Notes under the pieces: generated by a model
The model's input: only the letters and a program-made list of their open reading frames with translations
The model's database searches: none
Told to the model about the DNA's origin: nothing
Shown here: positions 1,936-61,900 of the stretch, piece after piece
Layout: each line of letters opens with the position of its first letter
How positions within the stretch are numbered: the first letter of the stretch is position 1
DNA from: Malacoraja senta
Lineage: Eukaryota
Length of the DNA stretch: 64,000 nt
Assembly: GCA_038087875.1 (NCBI GenBank)
Contig: CM075982.1
Location: forward strand, 19,592,001 to 19,656,000
Direction: 5' to 3'
Position numbers and translations under genes: made by a program

Positions 1936-4900
1936 GTCAGTAGCGGAGTGCACGATTCAATCTAAGAACACCCTCATGTTATATTTTCATAGAACTTTAG
2001 ATTTAAATATTATAGGACTTTGCCATCCCTTTCCTTGCATTCTTATAGTGTTCACTGGTTTTAGTAGTGGAAGAATCATCTGAAGTGGACTATGAAAATG
2101 GACAGAGCCATGGACAGGGAGAAAAATGGGTCAGTGGTGGGAAGAGAGAAAAAGGAGGAAACAAACTGAAGCTCATAAGAACTCTTTATCCAATTTTATC
2201 TGTTCACACAGTAAACTTGATGTAACATTTATCCATTAATTTCACCCTGGGTTATATTGCTACAGAATATCAGATGCGAATAGAAACATAGAAAATAGGT
2301 GCAGGAGTATAATCATCCTGAACATCCAAAATCAGTACCCTATTCCTGCTTTCTCCCCATATCCCTTGATTCCATTAGCTCTGAGAGCTATATCTAAGTC
2401 TCTCTTGAATACATCCAGTGAAATGGCCTCCACTGCCTACTGTGGTAGAGAATTCCACAGATTCGCAACTCTGGGTGAAAAAGATATTCCTCATCTCATT
2501 CTGAAATGGTCTACCCCTTATTCTAAACTGTGACCCTTGGTTCTGGACTCTCCCAACAACAGGAGCATTTTTCCTGCATCTAGCCTGTCCAATCCCTTAA
2601 GAATTTTATGCTTCTATAAAATCCCCTCTCATCCTTCTAAATTCCAGTGAATATAAGCCCAGTCGATCCATTATTTCATCATATGTCAGTCCCGCCATCC
2701 CGGGAATTAACCTGGTGAACTTACGCTGCACTCCCTCAATAGCAAGAATAATAACGTAGAGTGAAGAAAGTTCACATTTTCTGGTTTGTATGTCAGTAAG
2801 ACCTGAGTTTTGAATGCTGGTCTGACTGGGCTGTCTTTACAGCTTCTTGGAAAAAAGGATGTTTTTTGGTCCTTTACGCAGCAGCCTCTGCTGGACAGAA
2901 AGAAGCTTTTCACTGTTCTTCAGCACATGTGACAATAATAAAACTAAACAGAATGCCTCTGAATAATCAAATAAAGACCGAGCTGAACTCTGATCTGAAA
3001 TGTTAACTTTTGTTTCCTCTCCCAACATGCTCCTTGGCCCTGCTGAACATTATGCAAATTTACTGCTTTGTTTGGAGCTCTGAATTATTTGGTAATGGTA
3101 GTTTAGAGAAGTGTGACAATTTAAATAGGAACCTTTTTGTTGGCTTTTTGTTTTCTTGTTAAGACATGGCATTTATTTGCAGTATGTAGTCATTACAGAC
3201 CAAGCTGGTATTTAATGCCTATCCCTAATTGCACCCATGACTTCAGAGATTTTTAGTTGACCATGTTGCTGTGTTTGGAGCTGCCCCCTGTGGTCAGAAC
3301 GTCCAAGGATGGTAGATTATTTGCTAAGGCACAAGGAACAAAGTCATGATTTCACATGATCTCACTTGGGTCTCCTCAAAATTCTATCCCCTACTTCCAA
3401 TTCCTCCATCTACGTGTATCTGCGCCCAGGATGAGGTGTTCCTTACCAGAGCATCGGAGATGTCCTCATTCTTTAGGGAACGGGGTTCTCCTCTTCCATG
3501 ATAGATGAGGCTCTCACTGGGGTCTCCTCGATATCCCGCAGCTCTTCTCTTATTCCCCCTCCCCTCATTCATAACAAGGACAGAGTCCCCCTTGTCCTCA
3601 CCTTCCACCCCTTCAGCCGTCATATACAGCATATAATCCTCCAACATTTTGTCCAACTCCAACGGGATCCCAGTACTGGCCACATCTTCCCATCTCCACC
3701 CCTTTCTGCTTTCTGCAGAGACCGTTCCCTCTGTAACTCCCTGGTCAACTTGTCCCTTCCCACAAAACCACCCGTTTCCCAGGTACTTTCCCCTGCAACC
3801 GCAGGAGATGCAACACCTGTCCCTTTACCTCCCCCCTCAACTCCATACAAAGACTTAAACAGTCTTTCCAGGTGAGGCAGAGGTTCACTTGCACCTCCTC
3901 CAACCTCATCTACTGTATCCGCTGTTCCAGGTGTCAACTTCTCTACATCGACGAGAACAAGCACAGGCTCGGCGATCGTTTCGCTGAACACCTCCGCTCA
4001 GTCCGTCTTAACCTATCTGATCTCCCGGTGGCCCAGCACTTCAACTCCCACTCCATTCCCAATCTAACCTTTCTGTCCTGGGCCTCCTCCATTGTCAGAG
4101 TGAGGCCCAGCACAAATTGGAGGAACAGCACCTCATATTTCGCTTGGGTAGTTTACACCCCTGCGGTATGAACATTGACTTCTCTAACTTCAGATAGCCC
4201 CTGCTTTCTCTCTCCTTCCCCTTCCCAGTTCTCCCACTTGTCCTACTGTCTCGGCCTACATTCTATCTTTGTTCCGCCCACTCCCCTTACATCAGTCTGA
4301 AGAAGGGTCTCGACTCGAAACGCCACCCATTCCTTCTCTCCAGAGATGCTGCCTCACCCGCTGAGTTACTCCAGCATTTTGTGACTACTGTGATTTCACA
4401 GTCACTGATGCCAACTTTTCCTTTAAACTGTGTTTAATTACATGCATTTGAATGGAGTAGATGGTGTGATGCAGTAACTTGTCCTCTGGATCAAAAGACA
4501 AAGATGCTGGATAGTAGTCGAGTAATTTAATCACAATGGTACAACTCCTCGGCCACTTTAAAAAGTGGGAATGAACGATCATTTGGACATTGTATTAACT
4601 GGTCGGCACTTGGCCAAATAATTCCCCAGGTGAAAGTCAGTGTTGGAGTCTTAACACACTTGAACTTAATATTTGCAAATCATTTTAATCATGCCTTTAA
4701 TTCATCATTAATTATTTATGTGAACTTATTAAAAGGAATTTCTTGTAGTTGATGTAGACACCTTGTGACCCGGTAGTCGTTTGTGAAATTAGCAGGGTAC
4801 TGTTGTAAATGAACTTTCTATTGTTGTTGTGTTGTTGGCGAGTCAAATTGAAATGTTTCTCTTATCTTTACAAGGATGCAGAGGGAAGAACTCCAATCCA

Positions 4901-23625: not shown

Positions 23626-26600
23626 CTGGAAAGAGAAAGATTACTATTCAGTGTTGGGATTCTATAGTGGTGTAACTTGTCCTGTTCATAAGCAACCACT
23701 CACTCTTATCTCTGAGCCAGCTTGTTTGTCCATACCTCTCGCCCCCTTGCTTTTCCACTGGCTTTGTACTGAAAGGGCAACTGTGTGTGTTGCAAAATCC
23801 TTGTTACTGCAGGATGCTTTGGGGAAAATTTTAATGCATGTTTGCTTGAAGTGGATTGGCTGCAATGATGTGCAAGAGAGGCCAGATCCATCTCCAAAGT
23901 GAATCTGGTTATGGTCACTCCTATCAGAGTGAACAATACAACAAAGGCCGAGCACACAGTATGATCCAATAAAGTTGCCCAACTTTACTGAGAGCAACAC
24001 AGTGGCGCAGCAGTTAGCACTGCTGCCTCAACTTGTGACCCAAATTCGTTCCTGACCTTGGCTACCGTCTGTGTGGAGTTTACACATTTTCTCCCTGTGA
24101 TCTTGTAGTTTCCCCCCCCTGATGCTCCAATTTTTTTCCCCACACCCAATGATGTTCATATGGGTTACATGGCTGCTGTGAAGTTAGTGAGGAGGTTAGG
24201 TAGAAAAAGGATGAAAAGGGACTTGGGTGTTTGAGAAAATGGGTTACATGGGGAATGGGACTGATATGTTGGAAGGTTGGATGAATCAGATAGGCCAAAT
24301 GATCTGTTCATAATGTGCAAATTCTTGAGGAAGACGTTTTAAATCCTGATCTCCATGCAGTAGAAGACAAAATCCAACCAGCTCCACCAATAGGTTCATC
24401 ATCATTAGTCAACACACAACAGACTATAGATTAGTGGAAAGAACAAATGTCTGACCTGTAAGTCGAGCACCAAACTCTGCCGCCTTTGGTGGAAATCCAT
24501 TCCGAATTGCAGGGAGGAAACTGTTTGTTTTCCAAATCAGACTCTGCCTTCAGTTTCCTTCCTTGCTCTGTGACCTGCTCTGCATGGATGAGGGCTTGGG
24601 TTGGTTCACCATTATGGTCATAATATGTTCCAGCTAATCTGCCTTGGAGGAGGTTAAAGAAAATTGCTTTTGTTATGTGGCTTGATAAATACTCAGTAAA
24701 AAGGTCCAATAAACTAATTGGAAAACTGGAATCTGAGCAACAGATCAGCTGACAACTGAAAGCCTAACTGATAAAAAAGAAATGACTACTACTAAATAGT
24801 CAAGTTCAATACAGTAAGTATACTTTAGGAGGAAGTATGTTGAATTGTTTCAACCCAACCGGAAACATTTTTAACATACAACTACAGTGGTGGTTATGTT
24901 GCCAGACAAGTTATCAGAGATCAGAGTTCAAATTCCACCTATAACTCTGGAATTTGAGATCATTTCATAATCTGGATGCTGGAGGTCAACCGTAATGAGT
25001 AACAATGACAATAACTACATTACTGTTTTAAAAACTACCTGGTTCACTATTGGGTGTGTTTCTGAAACTACCCTACAGGGTTGACTTTATACCCGGCATA
25101 TATCCTTGTTCAAAAGGAAATTAGGGATGGGTAATTAATGCTGGCAGCACCAAAGGTGCCCCCACTGGAAAATTAATAAACAGAAATGATAGAATGTGCC
25201 CAAGATATTAAATAAAACTTAACTTGACTTTGTGTTCTTATTGATTCCCACAGTATCCAAAATCTATCAATCACAGCCTTGAATACACTGACAATCATTC
25301 ACCTCTGGTGTGAAGCAAATTGTAAAGATTCACATGTTAAATGAAGAGTTCTCATCTCAGTTCACAAATGTTAAATCCTTAACCCAAGACTTCTCACTAA
25401 TTCCCGACCAAGCAGAGAACACATTCCTCTTAGCATATCTTCAGTCAGATGCAATCATGTTTGAATGAGAGGGCAAGGGAACATAAAGATTGGAAAATAG
25501 GAATGACAGTGTCTGTGCCAAACACGCAGCTCTTATCTGGCTACATATTATCTATATCCATCCATTCACTGCATGTGTTGATCCATGAATCCTTACATCC
25601 TTGCTACTGGACATGAGAATACAGAGGGCCAGTAAGATCATATGCAAAGGGACCATGAGGCCAGTTAATTTAGTGGGCCCAGTCTGGCACCATCCATCGC
25701 AATGTTTAGGCTGGAAGGTTGCAATGTGGTCAGAAGAGGAAGTGGTGTTCCTTCAGCTTGCACTGTGTTGTAACAGGGTGGTAGGGCAAGAACAGAGAGT
25801 GGGAGAGATGGAGAGATAAACTGATGTGCAACTGGAAGGTCGGGATCATTGCTGCAGACTGAACGCAGGTCCTCTGCAAAGCCATACTCAAATCTGAGGT
25901 TAGTTTCTCCAATGTAAAGCAGGCTGCATCAGGAGCGACAATTACAATACATTAACTCCGAGATAGTTCAATGGCTGCTTCACGTGGGCCTTGAAGAGTG
26001 GGAAGGGGGGAAGGTGCAGAAACGGTGTAGGGAGAGATGCAGAGAGACCTACAGCATCCCAGAAGAAATAGTTCCTTCGGAATGCTACAAAAGGGAGAAG
26101 CGGGATTGGTTCTTCTGGAAATTGATACATTTTCACTAACTCGCCGAGCAAAATTGGTAACAAATAAGTTTGTTCCGTTAATGTCTGCTCAAAACAAAAA
26201 TAACTTCAGACCGAGATGATTCAATGCAATTCACCTGTCTCTTAAAAATCAAACGGCTTCTCTGGCAATTGCTCTCAGTTAGAAGAAGACAAGATGGAGG
26301 ATCACTGGTGGAGTTTGCCCATGAGCGAGTTTGGTTCTGACCCGAACCTATGCTCAAGTGTTCTGGTGGGTAGACCACAGAACGTCTGATAGATCAGTGT
26401 TGGATATGACGAGAGGCGGTCACACCAAGTGGTGATTTCACATCCGAGGTCGAGCTTGCAGACTTAACATCTTCCTAACTGACATAACTATTTCACCCAG
26501 ATTTGTTTTTTGTCAACCTTTCTCTCAATAGACTTACCTTTATAAATGTACTCTCTCTTATAGAAGGTGAGCCAGTCCTGGAGAGAGAGCATTTCAGTGG

Positions 26601-28839: not shown

Positions 28840-29700
28840 GGATAGACACAAAAAGCTGGTGTAACTCAGTGGGACAAGCAGCATCTCTGGAGAGAAGGAA
28901 GGGTGACGTTTCGGGTCGAGACACTTCTTCAGACTGGTTAGGGATAAGGGAAACGAGAGATATAGACGATGATGGAGAGAGATAAAGAACAATGAATAAA
29001 GGATATGCAAAAACAACGATGATAAAGAAAACAGGCCATTGTTAGCTGTTTGTTGGTTACAAATGAGATGCTAGTGCGACTTGGGTGTGGGAGGGATAGA
29101 AAGAGAGGGAATGCCAGGGCTCCCTGAAGTGAGAGTATTCATCCCACTGGGCTGTAAGTTGCCCAAGCAAAATATGAGATGCTGTTCCTCCAATTTGCAT
29201 TTAGCCTCATTCTGACACTGGAGGACACCTAGGACAGAAAGGTCTATGTGGGAATGGGATTAATGTGTTTAGCAACTGGGAGATCAGGTAGCTTCAGGCG
29301 GGCTGAGTGAAGGTGTTCAGCAAAATGATCGCCCAGTCTACGCTTGGTCTTGCCGATGTATAAGAGTCCACATCTTGAACAACGGCTGCAGTAGATGAGG
29401 TTGGAGGAGATGCATATGCCTAACCTGAAAGGTCTGTCAGAGTCAAGGGGGGAGGTAAAGGGACAGGTGTTGCATCTTCTGCAGTTGCAGGGGAAGGCAA
29501 CTGGGGAGGGGGTGGTTTGGGTAGGAAGGGGTGAGTTAACCAGGGAGTTGTGGAGGGAACGGTCTCTGCGGAAGGCGGAAAGGGGTGAAGATGGGGAAAA
29601 TGTGGCTAGTTGGGAGTCCGTTCGAGCTGGTGTAAATTTTGGAAGACCATGTGTTGTATACGACGGCTAATGGGGTGGAAGGTAAGGACTAGAGGGTAAG
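28840..29700 (-). mobile_element. Penelope-like element fragment (GIY-YIG region plus pLTR; hammerhead core 28905-28932)
   Basis: Reverse-complement similarity to 3378-4383. Confidence 0.85.
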
Positions 29701-29803
29701 GACTAAGGAAGATAAGCAAAGATAGACACAAAATGCTGGAGTAACTCAGTGGCACAGGCAGCATCTGAAGAAGGGTCTCAACCTGAAATGTCATTTGTCC
29801 TGG

Positions 29804-30445
29804 GCATTTGTTGGTTCATCAAGATACCATCAAATTGAAAAATTGATGTTGGACTTTTCCCCATGACTTAACAGCATGCAGATTTTCCATTGGTATATAA
29901 TACAGCGTAGAACAATATGCATGGTAATTGTGTGTCATATGCAACAGCCTTAATGTTGATAATGCTTTATATATTTCTGGTGCAGAATAAGAAATTATCT
30001 ATTTAAAAGAGAAACCCAGAAGAAAGCTATTCATCCACCATGCCACATCCTAAAAGTTCACCCAACCGTTCCCCAAAGTCCTGGAAAGTTTATTTTAAAG
30101 AAGGCAATAAGATACTCGAGTTATGATGAAAATGTAAAGCTTCACATAAGTTGCAGAACAGACCACATCCATTCTACATTTGTAGAACAAAAGGCTGCAT
30201 AGCACAGTAGTTAAACACAGAGGCTCGCTGCAAGGTATAACAGCTCCACAAACTTAAGTACTCCTGGTACAGTGTGTGACGTTTGCCCATTCTCCTCTAT
30301 CCACGAGGACTCTCCCAAGGTAGACACAAAAAACTGGAGTAACTCAGCGGGACAGGCAGTGTCTCTGGAGAGAAGGAATGGGTGACGTTTCGGGTCGAGA
30401 CCCTTCTTCAGACCCATTCCTTCTCTCCAGAGATGCTGCCTGTCC
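29804..30445 (-). repeat. Inverted duplication, copy A (partner 59786-60427)
   Basis: 642 bp; coordinates sum to 90231 at both ends; about 4 substitutions seen; the same 68-aa spurious ORF appears in both copies. Confidence 0.93.
30384..30411 (-). ncRNA. Minimal type I hammerhead ribozyme motif with extended stem I
   Basis: Reverse complement CTGAAGAAGGGTCTCGACCCGAAACGTC flanked by complementary arms. Confidence 0.65.
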
Positions 30446-31259
30446 AGCTAAGTTACTCCAGCATTTTGTGTCCATCTTTGGTTTAAACTAGCATCTGCAG
30501 TTACTTCCTACACACAACTACAAAAACAATGCTGGTAGCAGCATCAACGACTTGCTTTAATCTCAGGATGGAGTATCCACCTCCATCAATTCTCTTCACT
30601 TGGCGCTTTCCCTTACAATCATGGTAAAAGCAACATTTGTCATTTCACCTCTTCCCTTCCCATCATCCAGAGATCCAGACAATGTTTACAGTGAAGCAGC
30701 GATTCACTTACATTATTTCCAGCTGTTGTAAGGGAGCAGGTTCAAGGATCTGACTAGTCGAACAGAAAATAGGCACACCCGTCCATTAACCTCGTTGCAC
30801 TTATGTGCAATGACAATAAAAGATATTATTATTATTATTATTAAGTTACAAATCAGATTTATTGGCAAGAGGGAGAACAAAAACAATACATACCTCGGTA
30901 TGCGTGGGGTCCGCCTTACAGCACACCTCCTTCTCTGTCTCCGTCCACGGCGCTGATCTCGACCCAGCCCGTCGGTGAAACCTTCTCATCAAAGAACTAA
31001 CTAACAGCTTACCGGCACCTGACTTTATACCGGCAAAAATCAGCCGTTGAAATAACCGCCGTGAAGTCCTGGCCAATAGCGCCGATTCCAAATTCAAACT
31101 GTAACCAATGGCAAAATAACCTGACTCAAAGAAATCCAAAGGAGATTATTTTTAAAGTATTTCATCCACGATAGTCTTATTAGGATGAGACAAAATTTAT
31201 ACAAAGGTTTTCTTCCAGAATTTCTATCGTTCAATGTCTTTCCAAGTTAGTGGTGTGAC

Positions 31260-31473
31260 TGTGTAAGAAGGAACTGTAGATGCTGGTTTAAACCGAAGAT
31301 AGATACAAAATGCTGGAGTAACTCAGTGGGACAGGCAGCATCTCTGGAGAGAATGAATGGGTGACTGAAGGAGTCTGAAGAAAGGTCTTGACCTGAAATG
31401 TCACCCTTTCCTTCTCTCCAGAGATGCTGTTATCACTCTCCAGAGTTACTCCAGCTTTTTTTTGTCTATCTTT
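31260..31473. mobile_element. Palindromic pLTR mini-element with CpG-decayed hammerhead core
   Basis: Inverted arms around CTGAAGAAAGGTCTTGACCTGAAATGTC. Confidence 0.75.
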
Positions 31474-32834: not shown

Positions 32835-34190
32835 GTAGGAAGGAACTACAGATGTTGGTGTACAGCAAAGATAGACACAAAATGCTGCAGTAACAGTGGG
32901 ACAGGCAACATCTCTGAATAGAAGGAATGGATGATGTTTCGGGCCAAGACACTTCTTCCGACTGAGAGTCAGGGGAGAGGGAAACACAGTGATGAAGAAG
33001 GGGAAGGTGTCAAAATGGGACATCAAAAGAGATGGGGATCAAGCAAAATGTAGAATAGATCATTGTTAGCTAGGAGAAGATAACAACAAAACAAACAGAT
33101 TAAATGTAATCAGGGAGACAGTCAGACTGGTTGGAGAACTAGGAAGGGGAAGGCATGGAGAGAGAGAGAGGGGGAAAGCAAGGGTTACTTGAATGTTAGA
33201 GAAGTCAATGTTCATAACGTTGGGGTGTAAGTTGCCCAAACAAAATATTTGGTGCTGTTCCTCCAATTTGCGCTGGGCCTCACTCTGACAATGGAGGTGG
33301 CCCAGGACAGAAAGGTCAGTGTGGGAATGGGAGGGGGAGTTAAAGTGTTTAGCAACCAGAAATCAGGTAGGCTTAGGCGGACAGAGCGGAGGTGTTCAGC
33401 GAAATGATCGCCAAGCCTGTGCTTGGTCTCGCCGATATATAGGAGTCCACACCTGGAACAACGGATACAGTAGATGAAGTTGGAGGAGGTGCAAGTGAAC
33501 CTCTGCCTCACCTGAAAAGACTGTCAGGGTCCTTGGGGTGGAGTCAAGGGGGGAGGTAAAGGGACAGGTGTTGCATCTCCTGCGGTTGCAAGAGAAGGTA
33601 CCTGGGGGGGATGGGGGTTGGGTGGTAAGGGACAAGATAACCAGGGAGTTGTGGATGGAACGGTCTCTGTGGAAGGTGGAAAGGGGTGGAGATGGGAGAA
33701 GAGAGGAAGTCTGAAGAAGGATTTCGGCCCGAAACGTTGCCTATTTCCTTCGCTCCATAGATGCTGCTGCACCCGCTGAGTTTCTCCAGCATTTTTGTGT
33801 ACCTTGGAGATGGGAGATGTGGCTAGTGCTGGGATCCCGTTGGAGGTGGTGAAAATGTCAGAGGATTAAGGGCTGGATGCGACTGCTGATGTGGTGAAAG
33901 GTGAGGCCAAGGGGGACTCTGTCCCTGTTGCGATTGGGGGGAGGGGGAGCAAGAGAGATAGTTTGGGAATAGGGCCAGTGTACGCATGGAACAGGCATTG
34001 CTCGACGTAGCCCATTAGAGAGGCAGGCATATCTGGGGCCCATGTCTGTGACCATGGTTACGCCTTGAATCTGGAGGAAGTGGGAGCAGTCAAAGGTGTT
34101 AAGAGTAAGGACCAGCTCTGCTAGGTGGAGGGGAAATTGGCAGGTTCTGCGATCGGAAAAGAAACGGAGGGCTTTAAGACATTCCTGGTG
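32835..34190 (-). mobile_element. Penelope-like element (RT remnant, GIY-YIG, pLTR) with nested pLTR mini-element (33700-33804)
   Basis: ELVLTLNTF...FLQIQGVTMVTDMGPRYACL (PLE RT motif); FTCTSSNFIYCIRCSRCGLLYIGETKHRLGDHFAEH (GIY-YIG); nested copy bounded by 13-bp TGGAGATGGGAGA repeats. Confidence 0.88.
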
Positions 34191-37900: not shown

Positions 37901-40900
37901 AAGGAACAATTGAAACAGAAGTTCCTGACCGGTCATTTTGAGAATATTTATTTTTATGGGTAAATCTAAAGCGAGTGATCGCTGTTTTATAAAATAAATA
38001 AGGCATTGCCTGTTTAAAGCAGATGAGACAAGAAAAATCTCTTCTAGCTTTGAGTCTAGAAAGTTCTCTTCCTCAAAGGGAAGTGGAAGCAGAGTGTTCT
38101 AATATTTTTAAGGCCAAAGTGTACTTGGTAAGCAAGAGGGTGAGAGTCGAGGTTACAAGTAGAACCGCCATGATCTCAAACTGTCAGAGCAGGTCCATGG
38201 AACTGAAGAACCACTACAGTTTCAATTTTATTGTCAAGACTGCTCATATTTAATTCTGTAATGTGTATTGTCTGAGGGAACAATTCGTGTGGCAGACACA
38301 CATAAATGAAAGTGCAGGACAGCTGCAACAGGTTGGGGACATCTGTGGAAAAGCCCAGTCAACAAATTAGGACCAGAATGGGCCACTCTGGCCCTTGAGT
38401 CTGCTCTGTCCTTTAATAAGATCGTGGCCGTTCTAATACTATATTCAACTCTGCATTTCAGTCCTTTAATCCCTTGCTTACCAAGTATCCATTTACCTTA
38501 GCTTGAAAGAGCTTTGCTACCTCTGCTCTTTGGGGAAGATAGTTCCAAAGACTAACAGGAGGAATCAACTCATCTCTGTCTTAAAAGGGCCACCTGTTAT
38601 TTATAAACAGGGACCCCTATTTTTAGGTTTTTCCTGAAGGGGAAAATACCCTCCCCACATCCACCCGGTCAAAATCTCTTGCGTTATTGAGTCTGCAGCA
38701 TTAACTTCTTGGTTCATGTGATTCACTTACTCCCGTTGATCCATAAATCTTGTTGCCGTTTTCTTTCTCACTTTTACTTATGAAAACTTGCTGACATCAA
38801 GAGGTGTAAATGAGCTGTGGGTAGAAATATAGAAGTGCAAGGGTGAAATGCCTTCTGACAAGTTTTGGATGTCTTAAGGTGATGACGAACAGAGCTTGTG
38901 TTTGGAGTAAAGTTCATGAGGCACTGATCTCATCTCAGAGTGACTGACCAGGGATTGCACCAGGCTGTTCTGTTGTGCTGATGAAGCCAATGCATCTGGA
39001 TGAGTCATTCATTCACTCTAACCAGATTGAAGTTTTGCTTGAAGTTCTGCGGGACTTTGATCAGGCCCTTTGCAGTTGATCACAATGAGAAAGATTAAAA
39101 GTTCGCAGCTTTTGTGATAATAGCGAACTCCTGAAATTGTCAGTGATCGATGGACTGTAAATGGAATTTCCTACCAATACAGACTCAAAGTGCTGTAGTA
39201 ACTCAGCAGCTCAGACAGCATCTCTGGAGTCTCTACCAGTATGTTTTCATTTATCCTGGTGACAACTCATTGATCAGCCTTGGTTGTCCTCTGATAGGAA
39301 CTTGCCTCAGGCCTGTGGAAACTGAGTTCTGTTCTTTGCTTTCGGAAGGTATTGAAAATTAACCGTAAAGTGAATCCATTTTTTATTGGAGCTTGCAAAA
39401 GCTAAGAATCAAGCTCATTGGGGAAAAAAATTAAAATGATCAATACCTTTCTTTTGACCTGCATATATCTATCACTTTTTTTACCAGGCTAATGTAATGT
39501 GTCAACACCAGGCACTGCTCCCTAAATTAATCAGATCGTCCCATCCTGCCAATATTTAACTTCCTTGTGTTGCTATAAAATATTACTCAGTACTATATAC
39601 AATCTACTCCGGTGTGTACTCTGGAATGGTACGATGTGGATTTGGGATTTGACCTTTGGGTTTCCAAATCTGGCTGTGCTCTTAAATAGAGTTGTGAGGA
39701 AAGGAGCATGATCTCTGCCACGTATTGCGAGACAAAAGACTTGATCTGTCAGACTTGCAAATCAGACAGAAAGGAAACAAAAGTTTGTTTAAAAAAAATG
39801 CTCAAACAAATGTTTTTATTCCCTAATTCAAGTGCAGCACTTGAGCATTAAACACTCTCTAATTCAGCTAGGAGCTGTGACTAGAAAGTTCCTGTAATTT
39901 AAGATGCTAGTGGATCAATAGTGATTGTACAACAGCTTTTGTCTTGCAGACGCACTATGAATCACATAGAAATATTTGGTGAAACATAGCTGAAAGCTCT
40001 ACCAAGAAATCAAAGAACCGTTCATGGGATTTTGTACAATCTTGACATTAGTCTTCATCTTTTCTGTACCTGAAATTGCTCAGGTTAAGTCTGCATTGTA
40101 CAGGAATTCAATGATAGCTTGACTTAATGTGGGAATCCAGCCAACGAGTGTTGCCAAACAGATTCCCATGGGAGGTAAACCTTGCACAAATTGCTGGTGT
40201 TGTTGTCTTGCCCAATGATGACAACCATTTTTCAATGCCAATTTTTAATAAATGGAAAAAAAAAGTAAAAGGGCTTGGTAGCTATTCAACAGTCTTCAGG
40301 AAAAGCTAACCAACCATCGTGGTGCAGAAGGACAGTTCAGCTGCAGTAATCCTCCATCTGCCCTTGATTCGTTTAAGAAAGGACTGCAGATGCTGGAAAA
40401 ATCGAAGGTAGACAAAAATGCTGGAGAAACTCAGTGGGTGAGGCAACTCCATAGATGCTGCCTCACCCGCTGAGTTTCTCCAGCATTTTTGTCTGCCCTT
40501 GATTCAACAGTTTATCTTTCCCCTACAGACGTCGTCTTTCAGTTTGAGCTCTGTGCTAAAACATTTCTCCCAGTTCTGAATCTGTGTAAGAAATGTATTC
40601 TGACAGCCGGTCCTCATGCACTCTCATCATTCTCCAACCGGAAAGGCCTTTCCTCATTCATCCCATTATTGGACAGCATAGCACAGTGGTACTGCTGCTC
40701 CTCCAGACACTCAGGTTCGATCCTGACATCGGGTGCTGTCTGTGTGGGATGTATCTGCTTGGGTTTCTTCCGGGTGCTCAGCTTTCTCCCATGACCCAAA
40801 GAGGTGCGGGTTGGTGGGTGCATTGGCTGCTGTAAATTGCTCCAGTGCGAAGATGAGGATAGGATCTGCAGGGTATTTAGAATGTGGGGAGAACAAATAG

Positions 40901-58900: not shown

Positions 58901-61900
58901 CACTACTGTAAATGTTTTTTTATTGTCTGTCCTTTGAAAGAAATGCATATGGACGAGTGAAATGTTCTTTTCTTTTGCAGGTTACGTTTAAAACCTGATG
59001 TTGTGCTGAAGCACGTTTCAATAGCAGTGTCAGCTAGTGATCAAAGTTACATGCCACAGCAGGTGACTGTGTCGTTGGGGAGGAATTCTGGTAACATGCA
59101 TGAAGTCCGTGATATTCGTATTCCCAGTAATATGACTGGATACATTACACTGCTGGAAAACGCAAGCATCATCCACCCATGTAATTGTACAGTTTTTTGT
59201 TTCTTGTCAGATATTATCTACTATCTGTTTATTCTTACCTTACATCAAATAAGCACTTAATTGATCTGAGATTGCTCCAGGTCACGTTTCTCATATTGTT
59301 GTGAAATCTAAGTATTAGTATCAATACAATAAATAGAAACTACATTAAAGCCTTAATCCCCATGATTAACATGAGAATATATGATTTTCTTTTTAAACAA
59401 TGAAAATCTTAACTCCTTTAGTTTGACTGTGTTATTTCAAACACAGTTATTTTGCAGGAAAAAGGAATATTTTGGAATTGATTAAGTAATACATTAATTT
59501 TCATATTTCCGTATAACACAGGACAATAAATTCTTGGCGTCCATGCTGGCACTAAAAGCAGTCCCTCCAATCTTAACGCCCCACTTATTTTTCCGTTCCT
59601 GCTCTCTAAATACCAGCCTGGGATTCTCCTGTCAGACACATGGGGAAACTTACAGATAACCAAACTGCCAGGGTCTGTGGGATATGGGAAGAAACTAGAC
59701 TGTCCAGGGAGAGCCCTGTGTAAGAAGGAACTGCAGATGCTGGTTTAAACCGAAGATAGACACAAAAAGCTGGAGTAACTCAACGGGACAGGCAGCATCT
59801 CTGGAGAGAAGGAATGGGTCTGAAGAAGGGTCTCGACCCGAAACGTCACCCATTCCTTCTCTCCAGAGACACTGCCTGTCCCGCTGAGTTACTCCAGTTT
59901 TTTGTGTCTACCTTGGGAGAGTCCTCGTGGATAGAGGAGAATGGGCAAACGTCACACACTGTACCAGGTGTACTTAAGTTTGTGGAGCTGTTATACCTTG
60001 CAGCGAGCCTCTGTGTTTAACTACTGTGCTATGCAGCCTTTTGTTCTACAAATGTAGAATGGATGTGGTCTGTTCTGCAACTTATGTGAAGCTTTACATT
60101 TTCATCATAACTCGAGTATCTTATTGCCTTCTTTAAAAAAAACTTTCCAGGACTTTGGGGAACGGTTGGGTGAACTTTTAGGATGTGGCATGGTGGTTGA
60201 ATAGCTTTCTTCTGGGTTTCTCTTTTAAATAGATAATTTCTTATTCTGCACCAGAAATATATAAAGCATTATCAACATTAAGGCTGTTGCATATGACACA
60301 CAATTACCATGCATATTGTTCTCCGCTGTATTATATACCAATGGAAAATCTGCATGCTGTTAAGTCATGGGGAAAAGTCCAACATCAATTTTTCAATTTG
60401 ATGGTATCTTGATGAACCAACAAATGCACTTTTATAAAACATTTTGGCTGCTTTTTTTGTAGCAACTTAAAATTCTGTTTTTATATAGATGCTTTATACC
60501 TGTGCCTTTTAGCTCAAAGCTCAAGATACATTTCAGTGACATCTTGACTTTGTGAATGTTTGCATTTATAGGATCTTAGCGAGCTATCTACATCAAAGAC
60601 TTGACATTATATCCTGTATCTTTAAGATGCAAGGTTTTTATTACATGTTCTACTTAACCATAACAATAAGTGGATTCTGGGCATCTAGCTATTGAAAGAA
60701 TGTCATTAAGCTGGAAAGAATGCAGGAAAGGTTCACTAGGATGATACTGGATTAGAGGGTTTCAATTATATGGAGAAACTGAGGCAGTTTTCCCTGGAAT
60801 GTAGGGCATTGAGGGATGACCATATAAATCATGAAGGGCTTAGATAAGGTCAGTGGTCATAGGATAGGAGATTCTAAAACTAGAGAGTATAGATTTAAAA
60901 TGGGAGGAAAAAGATTTAGAGGATCTGAGTGCAACCTTTTCCACATGGTGATGTGTATATGGAACGAGCTGCTAGAGGAAATAGTAGAGGCGGGTACAAT
61001 TACAATGTTTAAAAGACATTTGGATAGATAAATGGAAAGAAAAGGCTTTGAGCATGTCGGGCCAAATGCGAGCAAAGGGAATTAGTTGAGCTTTCGGGTC
61101 AGCGTGGACAAATGAGGCCAAAAGGCCTAGTTCTGTTCTAGATAACTCTGACTGTAGTGACTGCTCAGGAAGATTAGTAAAGCTCATGATCTGCTCAGGA
61201 AGATTAGGAAACTTCTATATGTGCAGTTGTTTGAATGGTAAGAAAACTAATTTGTTTTCAGCAATTTGCTTTTATTAAAACAAGTTATTGTCTCCCCGTT
61301 GAAACTTCAAGTGTGTTTTCATGAAACTTGGGACTAAGCTTATCAAAGGACATTTTTAAGTAATTTTTTTATTTATAGAAATGTGATTATTGATAATGTA
61401 TTGGTCCTTTGCATATGTACTCATTAATATGAATCACCGTGTTGAATGACAGGGCTTAGATTTTGTAAGCTGTCTTCGGATAACTAAATATTTAAGTAGA
61501 ATTATGATCAAATATTGTTAACTTTCGGCTGAAAATTCCAATGTTTCAGTTCTGAGCTCAGAGTATAGGTTAATCAAATCTTCGTGTTCCAAAACATTTG
61601 TTCCAATTTCTGCCTCGGTGCACTATCCATACTCCTTCGGTGGCAATTTGAATTTTCCAAAATTGTACTTTATAGTTATGTCACTGATTCACATGGGTAA
61701 AGTCCTTTTGCATTCATGCATCCCAAATTATCCAACTTTCCTAGCTTTCCTTGCTCCTAGAATCACACTCCTTAACCTTTCAGGATTTAGCTTTTGACCT
61801 TTCTCAAACCTGTTAGATACCTGTTAGATTTCTGTCTTCGAATGATTGAACAAAGCTTGCGTTTCTGCCTTTAGCAGTGCTTCTAAAGTCATCAATCCTT

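What the first reader, a model, noticed from the sequence alone, without database searches (positions are those of the whole stretch)
59755..59912. Hammerhead core framed exactly by a long stem I, in sense within ZZEF1 intron 5
Seen: in ordinary pLTR copies (e.g. 4297) only about 2 bp of stem I is apparent. Here the inverted arm ends ...TCTCTGGAGAGAAGGAATGGGT directly before CTGAAGA, and ACCCATTCCTTCTCTCCAGAGA begins directly after GTC. That gives 22 perfect bp in exact catalytic register, extending to about 65 bp with few mismatches. Inference: head-to-head pLTR fusion has built a much more stable type I hammerhead, predicted to cut after C59847, on the transcribed strand of ZZEF1. It could affect nascent RNA or release a hairpin RNA. 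Caveats: stem III remains minimal and no loop-loop tertiary contact is evident.
Basis: partly seen in the sequence, partly recalled or inferred. Interest (0 to 1): 0.8.

Follow-up and report, generated by a model that had tools for sequence, protein, structure and literature searches.

The report
Retrotransposon foldback framing a minimal hammerhead
The hairpin is real, but it is one of thousands of head-to-head insertion scars left by a Penelope-like jumping gene in this skate genome, and nothing suggests its long stem turns the enclosed mini-hammerhead into a working self-cutting RNA.

Summary
A 28-nt hammerhead core (59820-59847) sits between inverted arms with 22 perfect base pairs flush against the core. 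The arms are 70 nt long and 91% complementary.

The unit 59718-59914 is a single insertion flanked by an 11-bp target-site duplication. It consists of two inverted, 5'-truncated copies of a Penelope-like element (PLE) 3' end, one with the 33-nt "tail" and one without. This is the published hallmark of PLE insertions.

The exact junction recurs 54 times in the genome (549 with up to 2 mismatches). That compares with about 130,000 ordinary junctions and at least 15,000 foldbacks whose junctions fall all over the hammerhead. The flush register is therefore one outcome of a continuum, most simply set by the 2-nt GT/AC overlap.

The ribozyme is the known PLE "min-HHR". It has no helix III (ACGU with no loop), and the literature reports it as inactive as a monomer and weak as a dimer. 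Energy modelling does not favour the active dimer fold for the hairpin. No Rfam hammerhead model matches. Sister copies decay neutrally. No RNA data were usable.

The hairpin does lie in sense 537 nt downstream of a DOC-domain exon. The gene name ZZEF1 was not tested.

Verdict: an ordinary transposon scar of low interest.

The parts
59707..59717 (.). Left copy of the 11-bp target-site duplication, GGGAGAGCCCT. The last T could equally belong to the element.
   Evidence: it matches 59915-59925 with one mismatch. Sister foldbacks have duplications of 7-17 bp.
59718..59819 (-). Inverted PLE copy. It is the complement of the roughly 103 nt that follow the hammerhead cut site, out to the element's tail-bearing 3' end. 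It forms the 5' strand of the long stem I.
   Evidence: the arm reaches position +103 of the repeat, which is the canonical end (...CCTTCTTACACA in sense).
59820..59847 (+). Hammerhead core of the PLE min-HHR type. It comprises CUGAAGA, an extra A, stem II (GGGU-CUCG-ACCC), GAA, and ACGU in place of helix III. C17 is at 59847, so the predicted cut lies between 59847 and 59848.
   Evidence: At least 18,728 exact copies of this 28-mer occur in the genome. The features match the min-HHR definition in PMC4209133.
59848..59914 (+). Sense PLE copy downstream of the cut site, ending at about +67/70, which is the tail-less 3' end. It forms the 3' strand of stem I.
59915..59925 (.). Right copy of the target-site duplication, GGGAGAGTCCT.
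58981..59180 (+). Context: a host exon encoding part of a DOC/APC10-like domain, with an AG acceptor and a GT donor. The hairpin starts 537 nt into the following intron on the same strand.
   Evidence: Pfam ANAPC10, 24.4 bits, above the cut-off. PDB matches to the DOC domains of HERC2 and HECTD3, and an Atlas ANAPC10 cluster at 0.94.
29804..30443 (-). Secondary, inverted 640-bp copy of 59788-60427 (99.2% identical). It carries the same hairpin centre (core 30384-30411, arms 30314-30383 and 30412-30481). Its outer left arm comes from a different repeat copy, and it lacks the target-site duplication.

Best explanation
Window 59718-59914 is a single, fairly young insertion of a Penelope-like retroelement (PLE). 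It took the well-known 'inverted 5'-truncated twin' form.

Structure. One copy is the complement of the 103 nt between the hammerhead cut site and the tail-bearing 3' end. The other copy is the 28-nt hammerhead plus about 67 nt, ending at the tail-less 3' end. The two copies meet at a 2-nt GT/AC overlap, which is the base of stem I. That overlap is the simplest reason the core ends up exactly 'in register'.

How it most likely arose (inferred, not shown). Reverse transcription starts at both of the two adjacent PLE start sites, near +70 and +103. The outer cDNA then switches onto the other cDNA wherever the hammerhead's own self-complementary segments let two antisense strands pair. Those segments are stem II, the ACGT palindrome and stem I. 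The result is one strand that bridges both ends of the cut target.

RNA consequence. In the host pre-mRNA it is an intronic 70-bp double-stranded hairpin with the hammerhead core in its 28-nt apical loop. The core cannot form helix III on its own, so it is not expected to self-cleave. It has no demonstrated function.
For: PLE identity:
- The core has every min-HHR feature, including the extra nucleotide after A9, the G10.1-C11.1 pair and palindromic 15.2-16.2 with no loop 3.
- Decayed GIY-YIG endonuclease-like frames lie 200-330 nt upstream, on the same strand, of ordinary copies. Pfam GIY-YIG scores 24.5 bits in L020.
- Ordinary copies end either near +60-70 or at +100-103, which is the PLE 'tail' signature (PMC11167929).

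Insertion form:
- Target-site duplications flank the whole hairpin here and in sister loci.
- In 14 of the 15 foldbacks picked without regard to junction type (L031-L045), and in most flush-junction ones, one arm reaches about +97-103 and the other about +61-75.
- The literature describes an adjacent inverted 5'-truncated copy, and a 30-40-bp tail that is often present at only one end (PMC8557442).
- A PLE protein cleaves and extends both DNA strands and starts at two adjacent sites.
- The two arms of a locus share private variants: 27 observed against 10.3 expected, with a maximum of 26 in 500 permutations. L024 has the same 4-nt insertion in both arms.

Not special:
- 549 flush junctions against 130,018 ordinary junctions.
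- 4,531 plus 10,501 foldback loci were counted with exact anchors.
- Junctions are spread across the core with a cluster at the stem II loop.

No gain in activity:
- No Rfam hammerhead hit.
- The double-hammerhead dimer scores -92.8 kcal/mol, against -95.2 for two hairpins and about -105 for an extended duplex.
- Single min-HHRs are inactive and dimers weak (PMC6765202).
- The unselected part of the core diverges by 0.08-0.12 per site in sister copies, including changes to G12.
Against: - The two-start-site template-switch mechanism is inferred from genomic scars and one in vitro study of a lizard PLE. It was not observed in this species.
- Neither the RT domain nor a full-length autonomous partner of this repeat family was found. 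The one intact PLE I fetched (L061) is unrelated in sequence.
- Nearest-neighbour energies ignore tertiary contacts and proteins, so modelling cannot exclude assisted cleavage.
- The core at this locus is fully intact.
- No raw RNA reads exist for this locus, so cleavage in vivo is untested.
Confidence: 0.8

Rival explanations
1. The long stem I creates a monomeric, self-sufficient type I hammerhead that cuts host pre-mRNA after C59847.
For: All catalytic boxes are intact and stem I is flush with the core on the sense strand of the host gene. From my own memory, and not checked here, extended stem I helps newt satellite hammerheads with a weak helix III.
Against: Helix III cannot form, because ACGU has no loop. 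The first irregularity in stem I is 22 bp from the core, too far to touch loop II, so no tertiary contact is possible. Single min-HHRs gave no detectable cleavage. No Rfam hammerhead match was found. Sister copies decay neutrally.
Confidence: 0.04
2. The core cuts only with help, either as a strand-swapped dimer with another copy's RNA or when bound by a PLE protein. This would nick the hairpin in cells where PLEs are expressed.
For: PLE hammerheads are thought to act as dimers. The lizard PLE hammerhead cleaved only with its protein. This genome holds intact RT plus GIY-YIG reading frames.
Against: The intramolecular 70-bp stem competes with strand swapping. The modelled active dimer is no better than two hairpins and about 12 kcal/mol worse than a plain extended duplex. 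RNA-seq ends at the cut site were not found even for the active lizard element. The known protein-binding region lies downstream of the cut site, and here it is locked in double-stranded RNA.
Confidence: 0.1
3. The foldback matters as double-stranded RNA rather than as a ribozyme. The intronic 70-bp hairpin would be edited or diced into small RNAs that target the hundreds of thousands of related copies.
For: The hairpin is very stable. It shows weak, sub-threshold resemblance to microRNA precursor models. The family has enormous copy number.
Against: All Rfam microRNA scores are far below the gathering thresholds (40 against 73 bits at best). No small-RNA or editing data were available. The arms drift apart in sister copies. 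At least 15,000 similar hairpins exist, so this locus is not special.
Confidence: 0.1
4. The palindrome arose at the DNA level, through two independent neighbouring insertions joined by deletion, or through replication slippage. It was not formed during one retrotransposition event.
For: The repeat is extremely dense (about 25 copies in 64 kb). The second copy in the window shows that DNA-level rearrangement does occur here.
Against: One target-site duplication flanks the whole unit. The long-arm/short-arm rule holds across junction types. The arms share private variants.
Confidence: 0.04

Closest known systems
Complex tandem/inverted insertions of Penelope-like elements with an optional 30-40-bp tail (Evgen'ev and Arkhipova 2005; Craig et al. 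2021, PMC8557442; Frangieh et al. 2024, PMC11167929)
   Same: An inverted 5'-truncated copy abuts a sense copy. The tail is at one end only. Target-site duplications are of variable length. A hammerhead lies in the repeat. Endonuclease-coding remnants lie upstream of ordinary copies.
   Different: Both copies here are truncated to 100-130 nt, so they meet inside or at the hammerhead and the whole insertion is a 200-bp hairpin. No reading frame is present.
Minimal hammerheads (min-HHR) of metazoan PLEs (Cervera and de la Pena 2014, PMC4209133; Lunse et al. 2017, cited through PMC6765202)
   Same: [quoted passage not shown]
   Different: Published min-HHRs have a short (2-5 bp), open helix I. 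Here helix I is a closed 70-bp hairpin made by the insertion itself.
5' inversions of LINE-1 formed by twin priming
   Same: Both DNA ends of the target prime reverse transcription, and the two cDNAs are joined at microhomology.
   Different: LINE-1 inversions join adjacent, non-overlapping parts of the RNA, so they do not form hairpins. Here both cDNAs copy the same 3' segment.
Double hammerheads of newt satellite 2 and avocado sunblotch viroid (Forster et al. 1988, cited in PMC4209133 and PMC6765202)
   Same: Helix III is too weak for monomeric cleavage, and activity is expected only when two motifs pair.
   Different: Those motifs sit in tandem direct repeats that allow strand swapping. This one is locked in an intramolecular hairpin.

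Membership tests
Penelope-like element insertion (pLTR region) | A hammerhead motif lies in the repeat | tested here: met
Penelope-like element insertion (pLTR region) | Physical linkage to an RT plus GIY-YIG reading frame | tested here: inconclusive
   Endonuclease-like frames lie 200-330 nt upstream of ordinary copies on the same strand (tblastn E = 1e-13; Pfam GIY-YIG 24.5 bits in L020). No RT part or full-length partner of this family was recovered. L061 is a different PLE.
Penelope-like element insertion (pLTR region) | An optional 30-40-bp tail, giving two alternative 3' ends | tested here: met
   Ordinary copies end near +60-70 (12 of 20) or at +100-103 (6 of 20). The two arms of the hairpin end at +103 and about +67.
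Penelope-like element insertion (pLTR region) | An adjacent inverted 5'-truncated copy, with the whole unit flanked by a target-site duplication | tested here: met
   The feature is described in PMC8557442.
min-HHR of metazoan PLEs | Core boxes, a nucleotide between 9 and 10.1, a G10.1-C11.1 pair, and palindromic 15.2-16.2 without loop 3 | tested here: met
   Read directly from 59820-59847 against the criteria.
min-HHR of metazoan PLEs | Self-cleavage at C17, as a dimer | not testable with these tools
   Only assembled contigs of public runs were available. None covers the unique flanks as RNA.
Canonical type I hammerhead (Rfam hammerhead models) | Covariance-model score at or above the gathering threshold | tested here: not met
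   No hammerhead family was reported at gathering score over the whole window, nor at E up to 10 over 59600-60050.
Canonical type I hammerhead (Rfam hammerhead models) | A closed helix III and a loop I to loop II tertiary contact | tested here: not met
   ACGU has no loop nucleotides. Stem I is perfect for 22 bp, so nothing can face loop II.
microRNA precursor | A match to a curated family at its gathering score | tested here: not met
   The best match is 40.4 bits against a threshold of 73. All such hits reflect only the hairpin shape.
Miniature inverted-repeat DNA transposon | Symmetric terminal inverted repeats and a target duplication of fixed length | tested here: not met
   The arms are systematically unequal (103 against about 67 nt), and duplications range from 7 to 17 bp.

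The most novel reading that the evidence does not exclude
The foldbacks may be a readable record of how Penelope-like elements build their long-unexplained inverted structures. In this reading, two cDNAs start at the two neighbouring start sites. The outer cDNA jumps onto the inner one at the hammerhead's own helices. The flush class seen here (arm ending exactly at the cut site) would mark templates that the hammerhead had already cleaved in vivo. That would be the first genomic footprint of PLE ribozyme cleavage during retrotransposition.
Probability: 0.15. Interest if true: 0.5.

Novelty: new member of a known kind. Interest (0 to 1): 0.2.

Why it matters
For the original claim it matters little. 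This is not a newly built, stronger ribozyme acting on a host gene. It is one of thousands of insertion scars.

The modest value lies elsewhere. This skate genome holds a very large natural collection of PLE foldback insertions, at least 15,000 by exact anchors. They follow a strict long-arm/short-arm rule, and their junctions sit on the hammerhead's self-complementary segments. That collection could help explain the 'complex tandem/inverted structures' of PLEs, which the literature still calls mechanistically undefined (PMC8557442).

Tried and rejected
- Rfam was run at gathering score on the whole window, and at E up to 10 on 59600-60050. It gave no hammerhead and only sub-threshold microRNA-shaped hits.
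- RNA evidence: no listed run holds the locus as RNA, and all runs are assembled contigs. Laying four runs showed only the repeat family at huge multiplicity. Contigs break at the hairpin, so nothing can be said about ends at 59847/59848.
- Autonomous partner: a GIY-YIG search found intact PLE frames. The one I fetched (L061) is an unrelated, telomere-repeat-associated PLE. After the tool cut no further loci for that search.
- A simple snap-back of a single cDNA was considered and set aside as the sole mechanism. It cannot give the majority orientation, in which the hammerhead is in sense next to the short arm. It also does not explain why the second arm stops near +70.
- A junction hot spot at the cut site was considered. 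In two listings of 50 foldback loci each, the flush type was 1 of 50 and 0 of 50, so no enrichment is claimed.
- Two ViennaRNA dimer scripts with constraints crashed. I replaced them with a 4-nt-linker approximation.
- Gene name: only a DOC-domain exon was shown. 'ZZEF1' and 'intron 5' were left untested, because the protein search tool cannot match a 66-residue piece to a roughly 3,000-residue protein.
- Earlier-findings look-ups gave no note on this stretch other than the finding itself.

Full report
**What is there.** A 28-nt stretch at 59820-59847 carries the hammerhead boxes. It reads CUGAAGA, one extra A, stem II (GGGU-CUCG-ACCC), GAA, and then ACGU-C. It is flanked by inverted arms of 70 nt, 91% complementary. 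The innermost 22 bp are perfect and abut C3 on one side and C17 on the other. As RNA the region folds into one long hairpin at -128.9 kcal/mol, z = -16.7, with no shuffle folding as well. The left copy extends beyond the paired part, to 59717/59718. The whole unit is bracketed by an 11-bp target-site duplication at 59707-59717 and 59915-59925.

**What the repeat is.** The genome is a skate of 1.94 Gb (earlier notes of this scan; size).

- The exact 28-mer core occurs at least 18,728 times.
- The ordinary arm-to-core junction occurs 130,018 times with up to 2 mismatches.
- The core has every feature that Cervera and de la Pena used to define the minimal hammerhead of Penelope-like elements. [quoted passage not shown]
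- Decayed frames resembling the GIY-YIG endonuclease end of an intact skate PLE reading frame lie 200-330 nt upstream of ordinary copies on the same strand. Examples are window 3794-4093 before the copy at 4297, and 29259-29609 before the copy at 28905. One such frame, in L020, passes the Pfam GIY-YIG cut-off.
- Ordinary copies end either about 60-70 nt or 100-103 nt after the cut site. This 33-nt difference is the 'tail' signature of PLEs, explained in vitro by two adjacent reverse-transcription start sites (PMC11167929).

The RT part and a full-length partner of this family were not recovered.

**The hairpin is an insertion form, not a unique accident.**

- The exact 25-nt junction occurs 54 times, and 549 times with up to 2 mismatches. 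That is about 0.4% of ordinary junctions.
- In 30 such loci the homology stops at the ends of the roughly 200-bp unit, and target-site duplications of 7-17 bp flank it.
- Foldbacks of this family in general are very common. With exact 10-mer anchors in both arms there are 4,531 loci with an inner distance of 62-92 nt and 10,501 with 93-123 nt.
- Their junctions lie all over the hammerhead. Some are perfect palindromes centred on ACGT. Many are centred on the stem II loop. Others use short overlaps such as GGGTC or TCAG.
- In two listings of 50 foldback loci each, the flush type was 1 of 50 and 0 of 50. It is one outcome among many.
- Four foldbacks lie in this window alone.

**A strict asymmetry.** In 14 of the 15 foldbacks picked without regard to junction type (L031-L045), one arm reaches about +97-103 (with tail) and the other about +61-75 (without tail). 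Most flush-junction loci follow the same rule. This is what the literature describes for PLEs: an inverted 5'-truncated copy next to the element, and a 30-40-bp tail often present at only one end (PMC8557442). The two arms of a locus also share private variants more often than arms paired at random. The count is 27 against a mean of 10.3, with a maximum of 26 in 500 permutations. L024 has the same 4-nt insertion in both arms. This fits both arms being copied from one template during one event.

**How it most likely arose (inference).** A lizard PLE protein cleaves and extends both DNA strands and starts reverse transcription at two neighbouring internal sites. The scars here fit the following sequence:

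1. One cDNA starts at the inner site (about +70) and one at the outer site (+103).
2. Both cDNAs are antisense, so they can pair only where the sequence is self-complementary. In this stretch that means the hammerhead's own helices.
3. The outer cDNA switches onto the other one there and copies it back to the opposite target end.

Pairing at the base of stem I (GT with AC) gives the flush junction. That is the simplest reason the core is 'in exact catalytic register'. A single-cDNA snap-back cannot give the majority orientation seen here, in which the hammerhead is in sense next to the short arm. Whether the arm ending exactly at the cut site reflects a template already cleaved by the ribozyme cannot be decided from these data.

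**Would it cut?** Nothing supports a gain in activity.

- Helix III is the missing part. ACGU has no loop and can pair only with a second molecule.
- Single min-HHRs showed no detectable cleavage, and dimers cut weakly (review PMC6765202).
- The lizard PLE hammerhead cleaved only with its protein, and no RNA-seq ends were found at its cut site.
- The active dimer needs strand-swapped stem I, and a 70-bp intramolecular stem competes with that. In a nearest-neighbour model, the double hammerhead scores -92.8 kcal/mol, two separate hairpins score -95.2, and a plain extended duplex scores about -105.
- Stem I is uninterrupted for 22 bp, so no loop can contact loop II.
- No Rfam hammerhead model matches, even at E up to 10.
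- In sister copies chosen only by the junction, the 15 core positions that were not part of the search pattern differ at 0.08-0.12 per site. The changes include G12-to-A. This is similar to the arms, and only about a third of the copies keep the whole core.

The core at this locus is intact, and its arms differ at 6 of 70 pairs. This indicates a fairly young insertion, not conservation.

**Host context.** A Pfam search of the whole genome places an ANAPC10/DOC-domain match at window 58982-59149 on the + strand. The exon runs from 58981 to 59180, with an AG acceptor and a GT donor. Its peptide matches the DOC domains of HERC2 and HECTD3 in the PDB, and an ANAPC10 cluster in the Atlas. The hammerhead strand is therefore the sense strand of a DOC-domain gene, 537 nt into an intron. 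The name ZZEF1 is plausible but untested. Public runs gave only contigs of the repeat family and no RNA over the unique flanks.

**The second copy.** Window 30443-29804 is a 99.2% identical inverted copy of 59788-60427. It contains the hairpin centre plus 510 bp of unique flank. Its outer left arm belongs to a different repeat copy (86% identical), and it has no matching target-site duplication. It is a later DNA-level or template-switch duplication, not an independent origin of the junction.

**Verdict.** The 'improved ribozyme' reading is not supported. The feature is a new instance of a known kind: a PLE inverted twin insertion enclosing a min-HHR. The side result, a very large and regular set of foldback scars, may interest transposon specialists.

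Noticed in passing
L061 = G000:C5550:27500-32000; also C14:18.24-18.41 Mb and many unplaced contigs: [quoted passage not shown] GAAAC). It is arranged in tandem units of about 7.4 kb. This looks like an endonuclease-bearing PLE that carries telomere repeats and appears recently active.
   Followed up: partly
G000:C14:18,285,551-18,312,652: GIY-YIG matches in open frames of 274 aa recur every 1,561 bp. This is a satellite-like array of a truncated PLE segment.
   Followed up: no
window 29804-30443 versus 59788-60427: A 640-bp inverted duplicate, 99.2% identical and 29 kb away within the same gene region. One boundary lies inside a repeat arm and the other abuts a further rearranged hammerhead copy at 29719-29804.
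   Followed up: partly
window 31259-31472, 40400-40504 and 29719-29804: Three more foldbacks of the same repeat with other junctions. One has a partial duplication of the CUGAAG box. One has no hammerhead core and a 13-nt spacer. One joins the arm at GGCAGCAT directly to CTGAAGA.
   Followed up: partly
window 3794-4093 (+), 29259-29609 (-), 33380-33514 (-), 25698-25928 (-): Decayed frames similar to the endonuclease end of a PLE reading frame. At least the first two lie just upstream of ordinary hammerhead copies.
   Followed up: partly
window 58981-59180 (+): A clean exon encoding part of a DOC/APC10-like domain. It differs from the genome's APC10 gene itself, which lies on C1 in two copies about 44 kb apart (265.58 and 265.63 Mb).
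   Followed up: partly
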